Of a DNA stretch of 64,000 nucleotides, positions 13,221 through 21,759 are shown in pieces (positions within the stretch are counted from its first letter, which is position 1; each line of letters opens with the position of its first letter). Source of the stretch: Guillardia theta CCMP2712. Taxonomy: Eukaryota > Protista > Cryptophyta. The DNA is taken from positions 1,073,806 to 1,137,805 of the forward strand of contig NW_005434666.1 of assembly GCF_000315625.1 (NCBI RefSeq), in the 5' to 3' direction. Below the pieces are notes generated by a model, which worked only from the letters and a program-made list of their open reading frames with translations, was not told where the DNA came from and did no database searches. A program made the position numbers and the translations under genes.

Positions 13221-14598
13221 TCACTGCGTCCCAAAGAAACGCGAGCCAACGTCTCCCAGCCCGGGGATCACCATGCTCTCAGCGTTGAGACCCTCGTCGA
13301 TAGCTCCCGCTATGATCGTGACATCTGGAAACTCCTGCAGCGGTTGTGAGGCCGGAGGAGGAAGGAGAAGAGAAGACGGGGAGAGACAAGGTGGAAGGGA
13401 TGGATGGGTTACCTCCTCAAAGTTTGCAATGCCTTCAGGAGACGCCACGAACGTCGCGAGCTTGATGTTGGTCACTCCCCACTGCTTGACTAGCCCGACA
13501 GTCGCTCGAGCAACAGAACCGCAGGAGAGGGTCGGGTCGAGGACCTGGCACACAAGACTCAGGAGAAGGGTGTATGAGGAATGAGAGGAGGGGAGAGTGG
13601 AGGGAGAGGAGGAGGAGAAGGAAGAGGGAGAGGAAAGAGGAAAGACATGGGGAGAGGAAAACTTACGTATGCTGTTTGACATATAGTCTCGTTGGTGAAA
13701 CGATTGTAATACTCGACTGGAACCAGCGTCTTTGGATCTCTGTACATCCCGACATGCCACACCTGCGACATCTGTTTACTCATCGCATTCTCTACATCCT
13801 CATTGCCATTGCCCGTCATATCACCTTGGTCAACATCATAAGATTCATCATGATCATAATCAACGATATATTCTCTTGATATATGTCGTCGTCGTCGTCA
13901 TCATCATCATCGTCATCATCATCATCGTCATCACTATCAGTAGCAGCTCTTCATATCTTGATCCACCTGAGCATTTGGATACGCATAGATGAAGCCATCG
14001 ACCATTCCCAACCCTGAGCGAATGACTGGGATGAGTGCGACCTGATGCGAGACTTGCTCGCCCATGGTGTCGCCGTAGGGGGTGGAGACAGGCCTGCAAG
14101 CATGGCATGAGGGCAGCCGCCATGAAGGCAATCAGCGCACATGGACTCAAGAGGGAGGTCAGCCATGGCTTCATACGCCAGCAGTGTTGAGATCTCCTTG
14201 GCTAACTCGCGAAACTCCTTGGGCTTCACGGACTTGTCGCGGAGGAACGAGAGCTTGTGGCGCATCAATGGATGCGAGCAAACCTGCAGCATGACCAGTG
14301 ATAAGCAAAAGAGCGCAAGACATCCCCATCAGCATCTCTGAAACATGCGCCTCGACATGTCTTCGGAATCACAAGCTATGCTCGCATGCCAACGATATGA
14401 TATCATCACTTCGTGCTCATCCTATCTTAACTTCATCCTGAAAAATAATCCGCGAATCCTAGTCCATTCTTCTTACTCCTCCTTCCTCCGCTCCTGGTCT
14501 TGCTCCTCCTGCTCCTCCTCATCCTCATCCTCTTCGACCTCCTCCTCGCCGCCGCCTCAAACATCCTCTGCGCCTCGGCTACGCACCTTGACCACCAT
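13221..14598 (-). CDS. upp: Uracil phosphoribosyltransferase-like protein, multi-exon
   Basis: MVVK|[39 protein letters not shown]...[13 protein letters not shown]...[17 protein letters not shown]...[10 protein letters not shown]...[14 protein letters not shown]. Confidence 0.9.
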
Positions 14599-14926
14599 GT
14601 TGCAAGATTCCGTCGACTTCTGCAACTGGGGAGGTTTTAGAGGTACAGTTCAAAGTGGGGTTCGAAATATTTCAGAATATGTGACGCGAACCTTTGAAAT
14701 ATGACACTATATATTTGAAATGTTGTGTTGCGGAGAACCCCTGCAACAGCCTGTTGCAAGGGCAACAACCATATAAAGAGGGACCTGTGGGACCGCAAGA
14801 GAGACCGTCGCAACAAGAGTGCTACAAGATTGACGTGAAATACACGAAGAACTTGTCAGTTGCTTCCTGAGCTTTACTAGAAGATTCATGCATAACATGT
14901 TAGATGCTCCTCCTCCTCCTCCTCCC

Positions 14927-17900
14927 TCACACCACCGAGTGAAGTTTCCTGACAGGCGCAAACGGATTTTGCGTGCGGTGGTGCTTAGAGCCGTAGAGGA
15001 ACTTGGGCGCTGAGCTCCAGATGCCCATGGCCTTCATACTCCAGAAGTTGTTGTCCACCTGCTCGCCCGGCCATCCCTGCATCGTCTTCCCCTCGTCCAC
15101 CACGTCCCCGCCCATGATCAGCGTGTGCTCGAGGAGCGTGCTGTACGGCATCATGGCGGCGCCGCTGAGCAGCCTCGAGTTGCTCCTCAAGGTGGCTCCG
15201 GGCCCGACAACCACCTGGTTCAGAGTGAAATGCCCGCGGCTGTTGATGTGGGCGATGAGCGACGCGCTGTCGACGGAAGCACCATCGCCGATGGCGACGA
15301 GCTCGGGCTCAGTCATCATGGGGTCAGCGCCGGTGGGGTAGAGGCAGACGTTGCGGCCGATGTGACTGCCATGGGCGCGGAAGAACCAGACGAGGAAGGC
15401 TGTGCCGTGAAGGTACTCGAGGATCCCGTTGCCGAAGTACGCCTGGCGGATGATGACGGTGGCGGAGAGGTAGAGCTGCCAGCGCTGGCAGTAGGAGGAG
15501 GTGTCCCAGTTGTAGACGCCGACGCGCCTCCGACCGATGTAGAACCACTTCATGAGAGTGGCGAGGGAGAGCGACAAGACCGTCGACAAGTTCTGCATGA
15601 CGATGAAGGTTGGCACCATCCTTAGCCCGATATCCCACAGGCTGTAGTCCACGACCACGAGCGTGCTCCTCCCCAGGAACTCTGCCGTGAGCTCGAAACC
15701 TGCGATGATGGGAAGCGACCGGTACATGGCGGCGAAGCATCGCCAGAAGCAGCCGTTGAGCGCGTGGACCCATCCGGGATAGACGACATAGGAGGCGTTC
15801 TTGAGGTGAAAGGCGTTGCCGAAGGGGCGAAGGGTGCTGGCGGTAGCAGCAGCTTCTCCTCCTGCCTCCAGCAGCATCGGCTTGCCAAACCGACACCCTA
15901 CCCACTTGGAACCAGCCTCGTACTCGGTGTTCTTCATGGCCAGCCCACCGGACCCGAAGACAACGTTGCGGCCTATCACACAGCCAGGAAGGAGCACGCA
16001 TCGATCCCCCACGTTGGCTCCAGCTTCGATGCGGATAGGAGCGCAGTCCTCCGCATCTGCCGTCATGATGATGGACCGGCTCCCAAACACCACGTCGTCT
16101 CCCACCTCCAGCAGGTCGTACTCCACCAGCCCCTCGAACAAACTCCCCGGCCAGTAGATTCGATCTCCCACCTTAGCCCCCAGCACCCGCAGGATTCGGC
16201 TGATCCCCCCGTAATGGACGCCGATCAGATGTCCGATCTCCTGCAGCCGCTCTCCCGGGAAAAGCTCCCCCATCAGCCAGTGCCGAAACGTCTCAAACTG
16301 CGTCGCGTTGCGCTTCCCAGGTGTGAACTTGCCTATCACTGCCTTCTTGACCAAGATGACGGCAAAGAGACGGAAGAAAGGCAGCACCGTCGTCCGCACC
16401 ACCCGGATCGCCAGGTAGTACCCGATCCTCTCGGGCGTCAAGAACCAGAGGAGCACGTCACAGTAGGTGTCGAGCTCGGCAACATACCACGAGTACAAGA
16501 CCATCAGGCGGAGAACAAGCAGGACGGGAAGCTGCTCAAAGATCCATACCATCCAGAGAATGAGCCTACCGTACACCCTCCACAGAAAGTTTGGCTTCGC
16601 AAATGTCACCCTGCAGCAGATCTTGTCTTGGACGCTGCCGATGGAGGCAGGCGTGATGTCATAGGAGGAAGAATTCGGACCCAAACACGTCTTACTCGGG
16701 ATCGCGATCCCTGGCACGACGGCGACTTTGCTAGCAATGCAGACCTCCTCTCCTATGTGGACGGGGGCGAGCACCATGCACCCCTTGTCGAGGCAGAAGG
16801 AGCGAACGCTGATGTTGTCTATGCAGGAGTTCGATCCTATTTCGATCTGCAGACAAGAAGAAAGTGAGTGGGTGAGATGAAGGTCGTGACTTGATCCGTC
16901 TCGTTGCTCACCAGATCGAATTCAGCCAGCTTCGCTCGATGATCAATCGCGACTTTCCTACCGATCTTAGCTCCCAACATGCGATAATAGAAGCAAAGAG
17001 TTGCTGAGTTGTATCGAAAGACGCCCCTACCGCACAAGAGATGAATTTGATCGACCAGCCACCACCGCAAGTAGTACTGAGCAACCATGTCACACGAGTC
17101 AAGCAAACTAATAATACTCACTTGTCCCCATAGCGGATATCTCCCAGGTTTGTACCTTCCGATAATGATCCACTTGCAAATTACAGCAAAGAGAGGAAAG
17201 AAAACTCCCGACACGACGCGTCCAATGGCCAAGGCAAGGATGAGGCCGGCGAGACGGTTGATTCCAGCCTGCTGTAAACTGACCCAGAGAGCGACGAAGA
17301 GGATCCAAGTCGAAACTCTTCGAAGAGGATAGATGAGGGAGAGAGGCAGAGCTTGCACGGTGAGGGCGAAGAAAGAAGTCTGAGAGAACGCTCGCAGACG
17401 TTCTTGCTCCTCTCCCTCTCCCCACTGCTTGTTCGAGTTCAACATATTTGACGAGTTCTCCCCAGAAGCATTCTCTCCACTCGTAGCTTCATCTACGCAA
17501 GATGCCTGAAACTCGCCCTTGCCAAGCTGCGTCCTGAGAGAGTTGACAGAGCTTGACAAGGAGGAGATGGTCCTGTTGGAGAAGATGGACGCAGCTGTCA
17601 GAGGCACGTCCATCACCCGGCGGATCTGCGCGACCATCCTTCCCGCGAGCAAGGAACTTCCTCCTGACTCAAAGAAGTCCGCGTTGATGCTGCACTTCTT
17701 GCCCAGAAGCTTCTCCCAGATGCTCTGGATCTCTCGCTCGGTGTCGTTGGAAGGCGGGGAGTAGTCATCCCCTCCATCCAACAGGTCGGGCTTCTTGAGC
17801 TGGTTGTAGTCCTCTGGGATCTTGTCCAGTGCGATGATCTGCTTCGGCAACAAGTAATCATGGAGGTGCTTCTGCAGTCCCTTCATCAGCTTGTGCACGT

Positions 17901-20575
17901 CCACGTTCTCAGGAGTAACGTAGAGCACCACAGGATCGCTCCCATCGGGTTTGGGGATGGACATGATGAGAGAATGCTCTATCTTCATCTCCCCCCTCAC
18001 TCGCTGAACAACATTCATGATCTGTCATCACATCATCAGCTCATGAGCACGAGAATACCATACTCATCACCTGCTGCAAGTCAATGTCGATCTGACGCAT
18101 CGGAATCTTTATGTCGAGGCCGCTGCCTCTCGGTGGACATGCTGCCTCAAACATGCGGAAATTTTGACTTGTACGATCATCGATCGGCTTCATGTCAAGT
18201 CTGTTGGAGAGCCGAATCCTCTGGACCTTGTTCGCCTGCCCCTTAGGGAGCTCGTCCATGAAGACAACAACTTGCGGCCACTTCGCAGGATGAAGAGTCG
18301 AAGCAACAAATCTCTGTAGTCCAGCTAGATCTACACGGGGGACGCCGGGAACAGAGACAATGGCAACACCGACCACCTCCTGCAGGACGTCATGAGGAGC
18401 TGAGAACGCGATGACCTCCTTGACTCGCTCATGCTTGACAACCGCCTCTTCCACCTCGAAGGGCGAGATAATCTCTCCTCCTCTGTTGATAACCTCCTTT
18501 GATCTCCCTGTGAGGTATATCCATCCCTCCTCATCCAGATATCCCATATCCCCCGTGTTGAACCATCCTCCCGGGAAGAAGGACGAGGCGTTTGCTGCAT
18601 CATCGTTTTCATAGCCGAGCATGAGAGGGGCTCCCTTCAAACAAACATTCCCTACATGCCCAACAGGCAATGTCTTCCCCTCATCGTCAAGGATTCGCAC
18701 TGAAGGCCCCGCGATCTGCCCACTGGAGGAAGGATGATCCAAGTTGTACTCACAGGAGGGCGAGGAGATGGGCATGCACTCTGTCATTCCATAGCTGGGC
18801 AGTACGACACAGCCAAGATTATCTTTCATGTCTTGCGCTAGTGAAGCAAGGAGCCCTCCCGCGGCATTTGCTACCATCCGCAGTTTGCATGCTGAATCAC
18901 TGAGATTTCTTGATTTCTTCTCTTCGAGGATCATGGTGTGCATAGTTGGCCCTGTGGTTCCATCACAGGAATGAGAGTCAGTTGAACATCTTTCAACATC
19001 TTGCAGTCTTTCACAGTGAATGTCCCACCTGCATAGTACCAGGTGACCTTCTGCTCCTCCATACAGTTCCAAAAAGCAACAGCGTCGAAAGCCGGAGCGC
19101 AGATCACTCCCCCGCCCGAAAGGATCTGAAGCATCGTAAGTGGTAAACTTTAAAGCAGAGATGTCCAACTAACCACTGCTAACACGTTTCGAGTGATTCC
19201 TCCAACATGAAACAGCGGCATCATATTGAGGCAAACATCAGTCGGAGTCAACCCCCATGACCGAATGATGCAGGCTGCTCCAATACAGAGCGTTTCAAGA
19301 GAATAAGGAACCATCTGCCAAAAAGAACAGTGAGATGAGCTTCATGCACACAAGAGAAGGAGCGAACGAATCACAAGAAGAGAGGGAGGAGCGAACGAAT
19401 CAGAGAGAGGGAGGACTTGGGGAGAAGCAGAAGACATTTGCATTCGCTTCACCTTCTTCTTCCCAGACGTGCCAGAAGTGTGCAGGACAAGAACAACTTG
19501 CTCGGGGGTGTTGTATCTTGCAGCTGATCGGGCTCGAGGTTCATCGCTTCTCGATCTTTCATCAGTTTGATCGTCATCAAGACTCACAATTGTAAAGAGT
19601 CCCACTGTCGACGGATCTGGCAGGAGTTTGAGGACCTTGATGTCTGTTGTTGACACGATCTCCTGCACCCTGGCATCGGACTCGTCCTGATGAACAATCA
19701 AAAACTTGCATCGTGTTCCTTGGAGCTCGGATTGAATCTGAACAGCAGAAACATTCAGAATTCATAGATGAACTACAATCAGGAATATATTACCTCAGAT
19801 ACAGTTTGTTGATTGTTGATTGGAACACAGCAGTATCGGTTTAAACACATCAGTATACACAGAGCCAGCTCTGGACCATTGGGCAAAAGCAGGCCACATC
19901 TCTCGTTCTGACCGAGTCCAAAAGACTCAAGCGAGAAATTCGACAAGAATTCACGTAAAGTTTCGAAGCTCAATCTTCCTCTTCCTTTCAAGTCTGTTGC
20001 AGAGACTGCAAAGTCACCATGCATGCTTGGAGAGCTGGGCAGCAGCTGCACCAGAGACTTGAACCCAAAGTTCTGCAAACACTTCTTCACATCATCTCCT
20101 CGGATGCTTGGCACAGCCTCCACACCATCACCATCAACGTGCACAACTCCGGGTTCATTGAATGGTGTGGCTTGCAGAACGTGACGAAGAGTGAAACCGC
20201 CACCATGCTTCCATGGGGAGACAGCAGCATCACAAATAATGCCTGCAAGCTGTGATCTCTTCGTCTGAGCTATTCTGGGCTGTGACTGAGCGGCATCTTC
20301 ACCGCTCTCTACCGTGAGTTTTGAGCTGAAGTCACTGTCGTCGCTCACACTGTTTGTTTCTATTGAGACGCGAACTTCAGAGACATGGTGTGATTCCAAC
20401 GTTGAGCGTATTGACCTCAAGTCAGACCTCTCAATGCCAGATGCACTTGCTGGTGTTTCGGAGTCTAGCAATGGTGCACTTAACCCCTCTGTTGTCTTCC
20501 GGGATTTCGAAGATCCAATTCGCTTTGCCCTTTCTTTCATTCGCCTCATGAGGGATTCTCTTTCTGATTGCGACA
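14927..20575 (-). CDS. NRPS-like membrane protein: acyl-CoA-ligase-type adenylation domain, carrier (T) domain, TM segments and three acetyltransferase-like/left-handed-beta-helix repeats (Pls/PosA-type C-terminus)
   Basis: LHTSGTSGKKK, PLFHVGG, YGMTE, FNTGDMG, GRSKEVINRGGE and LPKGQANK. T domain DFFESGGSSLLA. Three modules of the form KW..IGR...G.Y..W plus (L)G(A/S)(K/H)(I/V)G. Confidence 0.88.
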
Positions 20576-21759
20576 TTTCACGTGGTTGTATGTTACAAGA
20601 CTGATGCTACTGCAGTCACCGAATAAAAGCGAAATACAAGAATAATGCTCCGATCGTGCAGGAAATGATGTGGTTGCCGAGCTGCAAGTGGCAGGAGTAG
20701 AGGTGAAACGATGGCAGACGGAGGAGCGAGCTCAAGGAGAGCGAGCGCAGGAGGAAGTCAGCCGTCAGATCAAGATGTGAAGAGGGGGAGGAGGAGGAGG
20801 AGAGGAGGAGGAGGAGGATGGGAGGGAAACAAGATGCGCTGTTAAAGCTGCATCGCGAACCTTGGGGAAACTATGGTTACAAGGTCTTGGAGGGGTTCAG
20901 AAATTGATGTGGGGGTGGGGGTACATAGTTATGAGGTCAAGAGCGAAAATCTTTGCAACTACAAGGTAGGGTCTAGAGTATACCGGTACTCTAATAGAAA
21001 AAACAATGGGTACTAGGCATACGCTGGAGTATAAACTACAGGTCAATGTGAATCAAAAGGGGTCAGGGTAGGGAAAGGGTGGGTGCATCGGGTTTGTACA
21101 GGCAGGGTGCTTTTTTAGAAGAAGGGGTAGTGTCAATTGTTGTCATAGATGGGTGGGGTGGGAAGACTGGTGAAAGCAGGGGGTATCAAACATATGGAAC
21201 TAAGGGGTGGTCAGACATTTACAAGGAAACAGGGGTAGGGAACGTCCGTAACCCCCAGGTTCTAAGGGGGGTCAAAAAGGTCAGGGGTAGGGGCATAGTG
21301 GACAAGGTGTAGGGTACCATGGAAGAGTAACGGAACATAACGATTATGACAAAGAAATAACAGTGGAATAACGTAACCATGCGACCAGTGGCGAATGACC
21401 AGGAAGACTATGGTTTGGACGGAGGGAGGTGGGATTGGCGGCAAACATCGAGATCTTCCTTACCACGTCCGACTTGACAGAGAGAAGGTTTTTGTCCGAC
21501 TAAACTTCTCCGGGTTCAGCAAGAATGTCTGGAGGTTTCGCAAAGCTGTTCATTGTTTACGTAGCCTGGTCCCTATGTTCTGTCGTCGCAAAAGGTAAAG
21601 TTTGTCTCTTCTTGGTGGTTTGCTTTCAATCATTCCATCGTCATGTCCTGTATTCAATGGTCTCCATTGTCTGGTATCCTTTCTTTCATGATCGATGAAG
21701 TACTCGTGATCCCTCGAACTTGTAAAGCATCTATAGAGTTGATGATCCCATACTTTTCC

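What the first reader, a model, noticed from the sequence alone, without database searches (positions are those of the whole stretch)
14927..20575. Poly-lysine-synthetase (Pls)-type membrane NRPS in an alga, loaded by an acyl-CoA-ligase-type domain
Seen: A domain, then a T domain (DFFESGGSSL, Ser kept, ~17650-17680), then three repeats of hydrophobic helices + KW..IGR..PG.Y.W + LGA.IG beta-helix. Known: this C-terminal region is typical of Streptomyces epsilon-poly-L-lysine synthetase and related homopolyamide synthetases, whose A domains use the A4 Asp to bind an alpha-amino group. Here A4 reads PLFHVGG and the domain resembles AAE3/PCS60-type oxalyl/acyl-CoA ligases (LHTSGT, GRSKEVINRGGE). 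Inference: it activates a carboxylic acid that is not an alpha-amino acid and polymerises it or transfers it at the membrane, giving an unknown algal polymer or surface modification. Introns show the gene is integrated in the nuclear genome.
Basis: partly seen in the sequence, partly recalled or inferred. Interest (0 to 1): 0.85.

Follow-up and report, generated by a model that had tools for sequence, protein, structure and literature searches.

The report
Polymalate-synthetase-like membrane NRPS in Guillardia
This expressed nuclear gene of the cryptophyte alga Guillardia theta encodes a membrane enzyme that couples an acyl-CoA-ligase-type loading domain to a poly-lysine-synthetase-type polymerase; it belongs to a family found across eukaryotes whose Aureobasidium member is very probably the known polymalate synthetase, so it most likely makes a polyester, not a polyamide.

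Summary
On the minus strand, 20576..14927 is one 8-exon gene of 1,723 aa. Spliced contigs from three studies confirm all seven GT-AG introns and join the ligase and membrane parts.

Domain order:
- an oxalyl-CoA-synthetase-like ANL ligase;
- a relic NRPS A-domain C-subdomain;
- a carrier domain with its Ser;
- three repeats of two membrane helices plus a left-handed beta-helix, collinear with bacterial Pls/PosA at 24-26% identity.

It is not a Pls/PosA member. TIGR02353 scores 190 bits against a cut-off of 423, and the A4 Asp is absent. It is not an oxalate ligase either, because AAE3 Ser289 and His319 are replaced by Ala and Pro.

The gene is GUITHDRAFT_84689, which GenBank annotates in truncated form. 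It has one paralog. The family spans algae, fungi, Physarum and other protists, and its acyl pocket is nearly invariant.

Aureobasidium orthologs (1,685-1,690 aa) have the same pocket. They fit the published polymalate synthetase PMAs (about 1,682 aa, A-like/T/C-like domains, six TM helices). I could not verify that identity by sequence.

Best reading: a polymalate-type polyester synthetase, and a new member of a known but barely studied kind.

The parts
14927..20576 (-). Whole gene: 8 exons, CDS 5,172 nt, 1,723 aa. Exons: 20576-19794, 19737-19453, 19314-19174, 19125-19029, 18951-18071, 18021-17122, 17076-16912, 16846-14927 (stop included).
   Evidence: Model built. All 7 GT-AG introns (45-138 nt) are confirmed by spliced contigs in runs X1, X2 and X3. 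The model aligns end to end with the 1,725-aa Hanusia-cluster transcript ORF P0152.
19977..20576 (-). N-terminal extension (residues 1-200): hydrophilic, no signal peptide seen by eye, not conserved outside the cryptophytes.
   Evidence: No BLAST hit to other family members. Absent from the GenBank model P0181 but covered by RNA contigs.
18158..19976 (-). ANL ligase domain (residues 201-700): P-loop TSGTSGKKK, A4 FHVGG, A5 YGMTECMP, A7 TGD, A8 GRSKEVINRGGE, A10 Lys677.
   Evidence: PF00501 and PF13193. Best solved relatives are oxalyl-CoA synthetases 6qjz, 5ie0 and 8aff at E 3e-68 to 1e-51. Motif conservation across 102 family members.
17713..18118 (-). Relic C-terminal subdomain of an NRPS-type adenylation domain (residues 714-832), without the A8 hinge or the A10 Lys.
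   Evidence: The family profile hits residues 413-537 of bacterial Pls/PosA at E 1e-18 and 1e-15, just before their T domain. hhalign against the ligase's own C-subdomain gives probability 97.4%. PF13193 is above its cut-off in the Polychytrium ortholog.
17509..17712 (-). Carrier (T, PP-binding) domain; phosphopantetheine Ser852 at 17655-17653.
   Evidence: PF00550 at E 1.3e-9. The Ser is invariant in 102 of 102 members.
15029..17385 (-). Pls-like C-terminal membrane domain (residues 942-1690): three repeats of two long helices plus a left-handed beta-helix. LbH1 16986-16679, LbH2 16201-15899, LbH3 15391-15059.
   Evidence: TIGR02353. tblastn to bacterial Pls/PosA covers 85-89%. AF2 model of the ortholog has pLDDT 88.3 and pTM 0.87. 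Foldseek finds LbH O-acetyltransferases.
15248..15310 (-). Candidate catalytic pair in LbH3: Glu1597 (15310-15308) and His1617 (15250-15248).
   Evidence: Both are invariant in the eukaryotic family and in three bacterial Pls/PosA proteins. The catalytic role is inferred by analogy with LbH acyltransferases.

Best explanation
One expressed nuclear gene of Guillardia theta encodes a single-module, NRPS-like membrane synthetase. Shown: the domain order is ANL ligase, relic A-subdomain, carrier domain, then a Pls-homologous domain with six membrane helices and three beta-helix domains. The catalytic motifs of the ligase, the carrier Ser, and a His/Glu pair shared with bacterial Pls are all intact. 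Inferred: the ligase adenylates a small carboxylic acid that is not an alpha-amino acid and loads it as a thioester on the carrier arm. The three beta-helix domains, arranged like the trimer of an O-acyltransferase, then join it to a hydroxyl (or amine) of a free monomer or growing chain at the membrane and release or export the product. The most likely substrate is L-malate and the most likely product is a poly(beta-L-malate)-type polyester. The reasons are that the acyl pocket is identical to that of the Aureobasidium orthologs, and that those orthologs fit the published, knockout-validated polymalate synthetase PMAs.
For: Gene and transcript. Domains. Ligase type, and absence of the A4 Asp that bacterial Pls keeps. 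The pocket is nearly invariant in 102 members from many eukaryotic groups, which points to one shared substrate. The pocket is identical in A. pullulans and A. melanogenum proteins of 1,685-1,690 aa and in Physarum. PMAs is described as 5,049 bp, with A-like/T/C-like domains and six TM helices, scored 'NRPS-like' rather than NAPAA by antiSMASH, and its deletion abolishes polymalate (PMC9210645, PMC11286673, PMC11905612). Physarum, the classical polymalate producer whose synthetase is still unidentified, has a member, P0208. The nearest folds of the beta-helix domains are O-acetyltransferases that use a pantetheine thioester donor.
Against: The PMAs sequence (QHD40385.1) was not available. Its identity with the Aureobasidium cluster rests on length, architecture and antiSMASH class, and the accession was not among the 15 listed of 126 cluster members. 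PMAs itself has genetic support but no enzymology. The alga is only 46% (ligase) and 37% (C-terminal domain) identical to the Aureobasidium protein. To my knowledge polymalate has never been reported from a cryptophyte. The family is much more widespread than known polymalate producers. No residue was shown to bind malate.
Confidence: 0.5

Rival explanations
1. Same machinery, but a different small acid (another hydroxy or dicarboxylic acid) is polymerised, giving a polyester other than polymalate.
For: The pocket is enlarged relative to the oxalate ligase: AAE3 His216, Cys288, Ser289 and Ala313 become Gly, Ala, Ala/Gly and Gly. The substrate has not been tested. The family occurs in many organisms not known to make polymalate.
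Against: The pocket is identical to that of the Aureobasidium orthologs, which probably act on malate.
Confidence: 0.17
2. The thioester-bound acid is not polymerised. It is transferred once onto another acceptor at the membrane (lipid, glycan or protein), giving a surface or membrane modification.
For: LbH enzymes are typically single-transfer O- or N-acyltransferases. If the acid lacks a nucleophile it cannot polymerise.
Against: All characterised relatives with this C-terminal domain (Pls, PosA, probably PMAs) make homopolymers (PMC10522769, PMC11286673). The three-repeat architecture and the His/Glu pair are retained.
Confidence: 0.2
3. It is an oxalate-CoA ligase fused to other domains, as many database names say, and handles oxalate.
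For: The best solved relatives are oxalyl-CoA synthetases. Homologs are auto-named 'Oxalate--CoA ligase' or 'peroxisomal-coenzyme A synthetase'.
Against: The two residues specific to oxalyl-CoA synthetases, AAE3 Ser289 and His319 (PMC8905533), are Ala/Gly and Pro in essentially all 102 members, and His216 is Gly. Oxalate has no group with which to polymerise.
Confidence: 0.05
4. It is a true Pls/PosA-type synthetase of a cationic homopoly(amino acid) such as Lys, Orn or Dab.
For: The C-terminal domain is homologous and collinear with Pls/PosA.
Against: There is no NRPS A-core. The A4 Asp is replaced, whereas Azospirillum and Rhizobium Pls keep 'AFD'. TIGR02353 is far below its cut-off. No conserved acidic pocket residue was seen.
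Confidence: 0.03

Closest known systems
Polymalate (PMA) synthetase PMAs of Aureobasidium melanogenum (QHD40385.1; Wang et al. 2020, as described in PMC11286673, PMC9210645, PMC11905612)
   Same: Length is about 1,680-1,720 aa. The published description is an A-like domain, a T domain, a 'C-like' domain and six transmembrane segments, with no TE domain. The Aureobasidium family members (P0506, P0533) share 46% (ligase) and 37% (C-terminal domain) identity with the alga and have identical pocket motifs.
   Different: The identity of PMAs with that Aureobasidium cluster is inferred, not shown by sequence. The alga has a 200-aa N-terminal extension and a shortened A10 loop in the relic subdomain. 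No polymalate is known from cryptophytes.
Bacterial Pls/PosA family (epsilon-poly-L-lysine, delta-poly-L-ornithine and related homopoly(amino acid) synthetases; TIGR02353)
   Same: A T domain followed by a collinear C-terminal domain with six TM helices and three repeats (85-89% coverage, 24-26% identity). His1617, Glu1597, Asp1083 and the K-W motif are shared invariants. The relic A-subdomain matches their A domain.
   Different: The A-core is replaced by a complete acyl-CoA-ligase domain without the alpha-amino-binding Asp. TIGR02353 scores 190 bits against a cut-off of 423. The protein is about 400 aa longer. In the tree the eukaryotic clade is separate from two of the bacterial Pls sequences, which served as outgroup.
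Oxalyl-CoA synthetases AAE3 / LsOCS / Pcs60 (PDB 5ie0, 6qjz, 8aff)
   Same: They are the closest solved relatives of the loading domain (E 3e-68 to 1e-51), with the same A3, A5, A7, A8 and A10 motifs, the gate His and the A10 Lys.
   Different: The oxalate-binding Ser289 and His319 are lost and the pocket is enlarged. The domain is fused to a carrier and a membrane domain rather than being a soluble peroxisomal enzyme.

Membership tests
Pls/PosA family NRPS (TIGR02353 equivalog domain) | C-terminal domain scores above the curated cut-off (423.1 bits) | tested here: not met
   The ortholog P0152 scores 189.7 bits and the paralog P0182 189.5 bits. The window exons score 86.8 and 55.4 bits.
Pls/PosA family NRPS (TIGR02353 equivalog domain) | Six TM helices and three tandem soluble domains, collinear with Pls | tested here: met
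   tblastn covers 85-89% of the domain in Azospirillum and Rhizobium Pls/PosA. One BLAST HSP runs from model 714-1684 to Rhizobium 417-1330. The AF2 model shows three repeats of two long helices plus a beta-helix.
Pls/PosA family NRPS (TIGR02353 equivalog domain) | NRPS-type amino-acid adenylation domain with the A4 Asp that binds the alpha-amino group | tested here: not met
   A4 is FHVGG, where Azospirillum and Rhizobium have AFD. The best families are acyl-CoA ligases, and TIGR01733 appears only at E 0.0011 on one exon.
Pls/PosA family NRPS (TIGR02353 equivalog domain) | Carrier domain with phosphopantetheine Ser | tested here: met
   PF00550 at E 1.3e-9. The Ser is invariant.
Polymalate synthetase (PMAs) type | A-like domain, T domain, C-like domain and six TM segments in one protein of about 1,680 aa | tested here: met
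   1,723 aa with that order. The published description is in PMC11286673 and PMC9210645.
Polymalate synthetase (PMAs) type | Sequence homology to QHD40385.1 | not testable with these tools
   The sequence is not retrievable here. As a proxy, the Aureobasidium cluster P0506 (1,685-1,690 aa, includes A. melanogenum) is 46% and 37% identical. The accession was not among the listed cluster members.
Polymalate synthetase (PMAs) type | Same acyl-binding pocket as the Aureobasidium enzyme | tested here: met
   The A4, pre-A5 and A5 motifs are identical in the model, P0506 and P0533.
Polymalate synthetase (PMAs) type | The organism makes poly(beta-L-malate) in dependence on the gene | not testable with these tools
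   Needs chemistry and genetics in Guillardia.
Oxalyl-CoA synthetase (AAE3/Pcs60) | Oxalate-specific Ser289 and His319 (AAE3 numbering; PMC8905533) | tested here: not met
   They align to Ala466 (Ala or Gly in the family) and Pro496 (Pro in 101 of 102 members).
Oxalyl-CoA synthetase (AAE3/Pcs60) | Closest overall sequence relative among characterised ANL enzymes | tested here: met
   6qjz at 2.7e-68 and 5ie0 at 1.8e-64. For exon 5 alone the next family scores 1.9e-28.

The most novel reading that the evidence does not exclude
Cryptophyte algae, and with them green algae, pelagophytes, dinoflagellates, chytrids, Mucoromycota, mushrooms and slime moulds, make poly(beta-L-malate) or a close polyester with this enzyme. 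On this reading the polyanion known from Physarum nuclei and Aureobasidium cultures is an ancient and widespread eukaryotic polymer. The Physarum family member P0208 would be its long-sought synthetase. The enzyme would have arisen when a complete dicarboxylate-type acyl-CoA ligase replaced the A-core of a Pls-like NRPS and left the old A-subdomain as a scar.
Probability: 0.35. Interest if true: 0.7.

Novelty: new member of a known kind. Interest (0 to 1): 0.5.

Why it matters
Polymalate is a biodegradable polyanion of biomedical interest. It is known from very few organisms, and its synthetase has been named in only one fungus and never studied as an enzyme. This gene places an alga in that enzyme family. 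It suggests the family is old and eukaryote-wide, and it gives a concrete candidate for the unidentified Physarum synthetase. It also shows how the enzyme was built: a Pls-like polymerase was re-armed with an acyl-CoA ligase, and the scar is still visible. The nearly invariant pocket across more than 100 proteins makes the substrate question answerable with one assay. It also corrects widespread database names such as 'Oxalate--CoA ligase' and 'peroxisomal-CoA synthetase', and a truncated GenBank model.

Tried and rejected
- **Prokaryotic relatives.** A scan of one genome per prokaryotic species with the family's most conserved motif gave a single weak hexapeptide match in a thaumarchaeote, so no prokaryote with this fused type was found. 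This is a pattern search, not proof of absence.
- **Solved structures.** No solved structure matches the C-terminal domain as a whole, by sequence or by fold. Only single LbH acetyltransferases match.
- **PMAs sequence.** I searched papers for the locus tags and for QHD40385.1, and searched the supplement of PMC11905612. This produced no sequence and no domain table for PMAs. PMC7580597 is not held. Two broad paper searches were uninformative.
- **Epichloe P0108.** I first suspected this was the fungal epsilon-PL synthetase Epls. I rejected that: Epls is 51% identical to Streptomyces Pls (PMC7179176), whereas P0108 scores 185 bits on TIGR02353 and has a degenerate ligase.
- **Raw RNA reads.** Run X19 covered only the 3' end of the gene, as a 3'-tag-like library would, so it gave strand and expression but no junctions.
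- **Not attempted.** No complex prediction was run.
Full report
**The gene**

ORFs on the minus strand between 20576 and 14927 carry AMP-binding, AMP-binding_C, PP-binding and Hexapep domains. I joined them at GT-AG sites into 8 exons with a 5,172-nt CDS encoding 1,723 aa. The introns are 56, 138, 48, 77, 49, 45 and 65 nt long.

Spliced contigs from three runs of three different studies show exactly these seven joints. One contig of 3,927 nt runs from 14900 to 18948, covering the membrane domain, the carrier and ligase exon 5. Others run from about 17316 or 18319 to 20600. Raw RNA reads of a fourth run lie on the gene's 3' end.

The model aligns end to end with a 1,725-aa transcript ORF from the Hanusia phi cluster (P0152), at 88% identity with two single-residue indels. 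So the ligase and the T/membrane parts are one mRNA and one reading frame.

The public protein GUITHDRAFT_84689 of Guillardia theta CCMP2712 (P0181, 1,507 aa) is identical at 1,503 positions. It lacks the first 184 residues and two internal stretches of 9 and 23 residues. The genome has one paralog, GUITHDRAFT_145316, on another contig.

**Loading domain**

Residues 201-700 are a complete ANL ligase with all core motifs and the A10 Lys. Its closest solved relatives are the oxalyl-CoA synthetases 6qjz, 5ie0 (AAE3) and 8aff (Pcs60), at E 3e-68 to 1e-51. For exon 5 alone the next family scores only 1.9e-28.

Bacterial Pls/PosA proteins from Azospirillum and Rhizobium have the NRPS A4 'AFD'. This protein has 'FHVGG' instead.

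It is not an oxalate ligase, however. PMC8905533 names AAE3 Ser289 and His319 as the residues specific to oxalyl-CoA synthetases. They align here to Ala and Pro, and His216, Cys288 and Ala313 become Gly, Ala and Gly.

In an alignment of 102 full-length family members these pocket positions are almost invariant: H-[VI]-G-G, N-A-[AG]-G-G-L and Y-G-M-T-E-C-M-P-I. That argues for one shared substrate that is larger than oxalate.

**Relic subdomain**

Between the ligase and the carrier lie about 120 residues (714-832). A family profile of this stretch hits residues 413-537 of the two bacterial Pls/PosA proteins at E 1e-18 and 1e-15. That is the C-terminal subdomain of their NRPS A domain, directly before their T domain. 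The ligase's own C-subdomain profile does not hit them.

Three further results agree:
- One BLAST HSP joins model 714-1684 to Rhizobium 417-1330.
- The stretch is homologous to the ligase's own C-subdomain (hhalign probability 97.4%).
- It matches PF13193 above the cut-off in the Polychytrium ortholog.

The A8 hinge and the A10 Lys are lost. The simplest reading is that a whole ligase replaced the A-core of a Pls-like ancestor and left this scar. An earlier first-reader note on this window (s1-437560) says the same. I tested the point independently.

**Carrier and membrane domain**

DFFESGGSSL is at 17679-17650, and the Ser is invariant in the family.

The C-terminal 750 residues hit TIGR02353 at E 8e-56 but with 190 bits, against a cut-off of 423. 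They align over 85-89% of their length with annotated Pls/PosA proteins at 24-26% identity.

An AlphaFold model of the ortholog's domain is confident (pLDDT 88.3, pTM 0.87). It shows three repeats of two long helices followed by a beta-helix. The best solved folds are serine, galactoside and maltose O-acetyltransferases, which are trimeric enzymes that take an acyl group from a pantetheine thioester.

His1617, Glu1597, Asp1083 and the K-W motif are invariant in the eukaryotic family and in the three bacterial proteins. I take the His/Glu pair in the third beta-helix as the likely catalytic centre. This is inference.

**The family**

A full-library search found 1,233 proteins at E ≤ 0.001 and 239 at E ≤ 1e-30. 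Nearly all long hits carry the same ligase at 38-50% identity.

Named members come from these groups:
- cryptophytes, Coccomyxa, Mesostigma, a pelagophyte and a dinoflagellate;
- Physarum and Artemidia;
- chytrids, Mucoromycota, Basidiomycota and many Ascomycota;
- a rotifer.

Many are auto-named 'peroxisomal-CoA synthetase', 'Oxalate--CoA ligase' or 'NRPS-like'.

In a FastTree of the C-terminal domain, rooted on two of the bacterial Pls sequences, the eukaryotic proteins lie apart from that outgroup. The fungal part roughly follows the species tree. The window groups with Hanusia and then with its own paralog. This is a quick tree and deep branches are weak.

No prokaryote with this type was found.

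The PosA paper already noted homopolymer-synthetase homologs with unknown substrates in lower eukaryotes (PMC10522769).

**Link to polymalate**

Reviews describe the Aureobasidium melanogenum PMA synthetase as follows (PMC9210645, PMC11286673, PMC11905612):
- QHD40385.1, with a gene of 5,049 bp;
- an NRPS with an A-like, a T and a C-like domain, six transmembrane regions and no TE domain;
- deletion abolishes polymalate;
- antiSMASH places it in an 'NRPS-like' cluster, not in the separate NAPAA cluster.

The family has an Aureobasidium cluster of 126 sequences of 1,685-1,690 aa from A. pullulans, A. melanogenum and A. subglaciale. Its members are 46% (ligase) and 37% (C-terminal domain) identical to the algal protein and have identical pocket motifs.

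By length, architecture and antiSMASH class this cluster is almost certainly PMAs. I could not obtain the sequence to prove it.

Physarum makes polymalate, and its synthetase is reported as unidentified (PMC9210645). It has a family member, P0208.

**Mechanism and verdict**

I propose these steps:
1. The ligase adenylates the beta-carboxyl of L-malate.
2. It loads the malyl group on Ser852-phosphopantetheine.
3. The pseudo-trimeric beta-helix domain joins the thioester carbonyl to the hydroxyl of a free malate or chain end.
4. The six helices hold the site at the membrane and may pass the polymer across it.

Only the domain content and the residue conservation are shown. The substrate, the product and the export step are inferred.

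The finding is real, and its structural reading is right. It is a new (algal) member of a known but poorly studied kind, not a new kind.

Noticed in passing
window 14927-20576 versus public protein P0181: The GenBank model GUITHDRAFT_84689 lacks the first 184 residues and two internal stretches (9 aa near residue 734, 23 aa near residue 910) that RNA contigs and the Hanusia transcript support.
   Followed up: yes
G000:C100:~268000-274700 (L001, L005, L007): A paralog, GUITHDRAFT_145316 (P0182, 1,616 aa), has the same architecture and pocket. It is 60% (ligase) and 56% (C-terminal domain) identical. These are the only two loci of this ligase type in the genome at E <= 1e-10.
   Followed up: partly
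P0208 (Physarum polycephalum transcript, 1,728 aa): A family member in the classical polymalate producer, whose synthetase is reported as never identified. It has the same pocket motifs.
   Followed up: partly
P0108 (Epichloe) and its tree neighbours P0124, P0107, P0118: In Epichloe P0108 the ligase motifs have decayed: the P-loop, A5, A7 TGD and A8 are not recognisable. The membrane domain is kept. P0124, P0107 and P0118 group with it in the tree and show weak or no ligase matches. This may be a pseudo-ligase or an enzyme loaded in trans.
   Followed up: partly
P0267, P0277, P0282, P0283, P0285 (Taiwanofungus, Mycena): Several mushroom members carry added RING-finger Pfam domains (PF00097, PF13923, PF13920).
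   Followed up: no
L010:2519-7496 (Pseudonocardia plasmid pBCI1-2): A split bacterial system: a stand-alone AMP-binding protein, then a T plus Pls/PosA terminal-domain protein (796 aa), then a TauD/TfdA dioxygenase.
   Followed up: no
P0159 and P0204: Proteins labelled as from archaeal MAGs (Promethearchaeia, 'archaeon'). P0204 sits among marine eukaryote sequences in the tree, and P0159 is in a 90%-identity cluster with marine contigs. They are probably misbinned eukaryotic contigs.
   Followed up: partly
window 14925 and 20044, run X1: One high-depth contig joins 14925 to 20044 (skipping 5,118 nt) with only 21 letters on one side. It is not seen in the other runs and is probably an assembly chimera. 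Unexplained.
   Followed up: no
window ~13221-14292, minus strand: The ORFs just downstream of the gene read like a uracil phosphoribosyltransferase, judged by eye from the translation. This was not tested.
   Followed up: no
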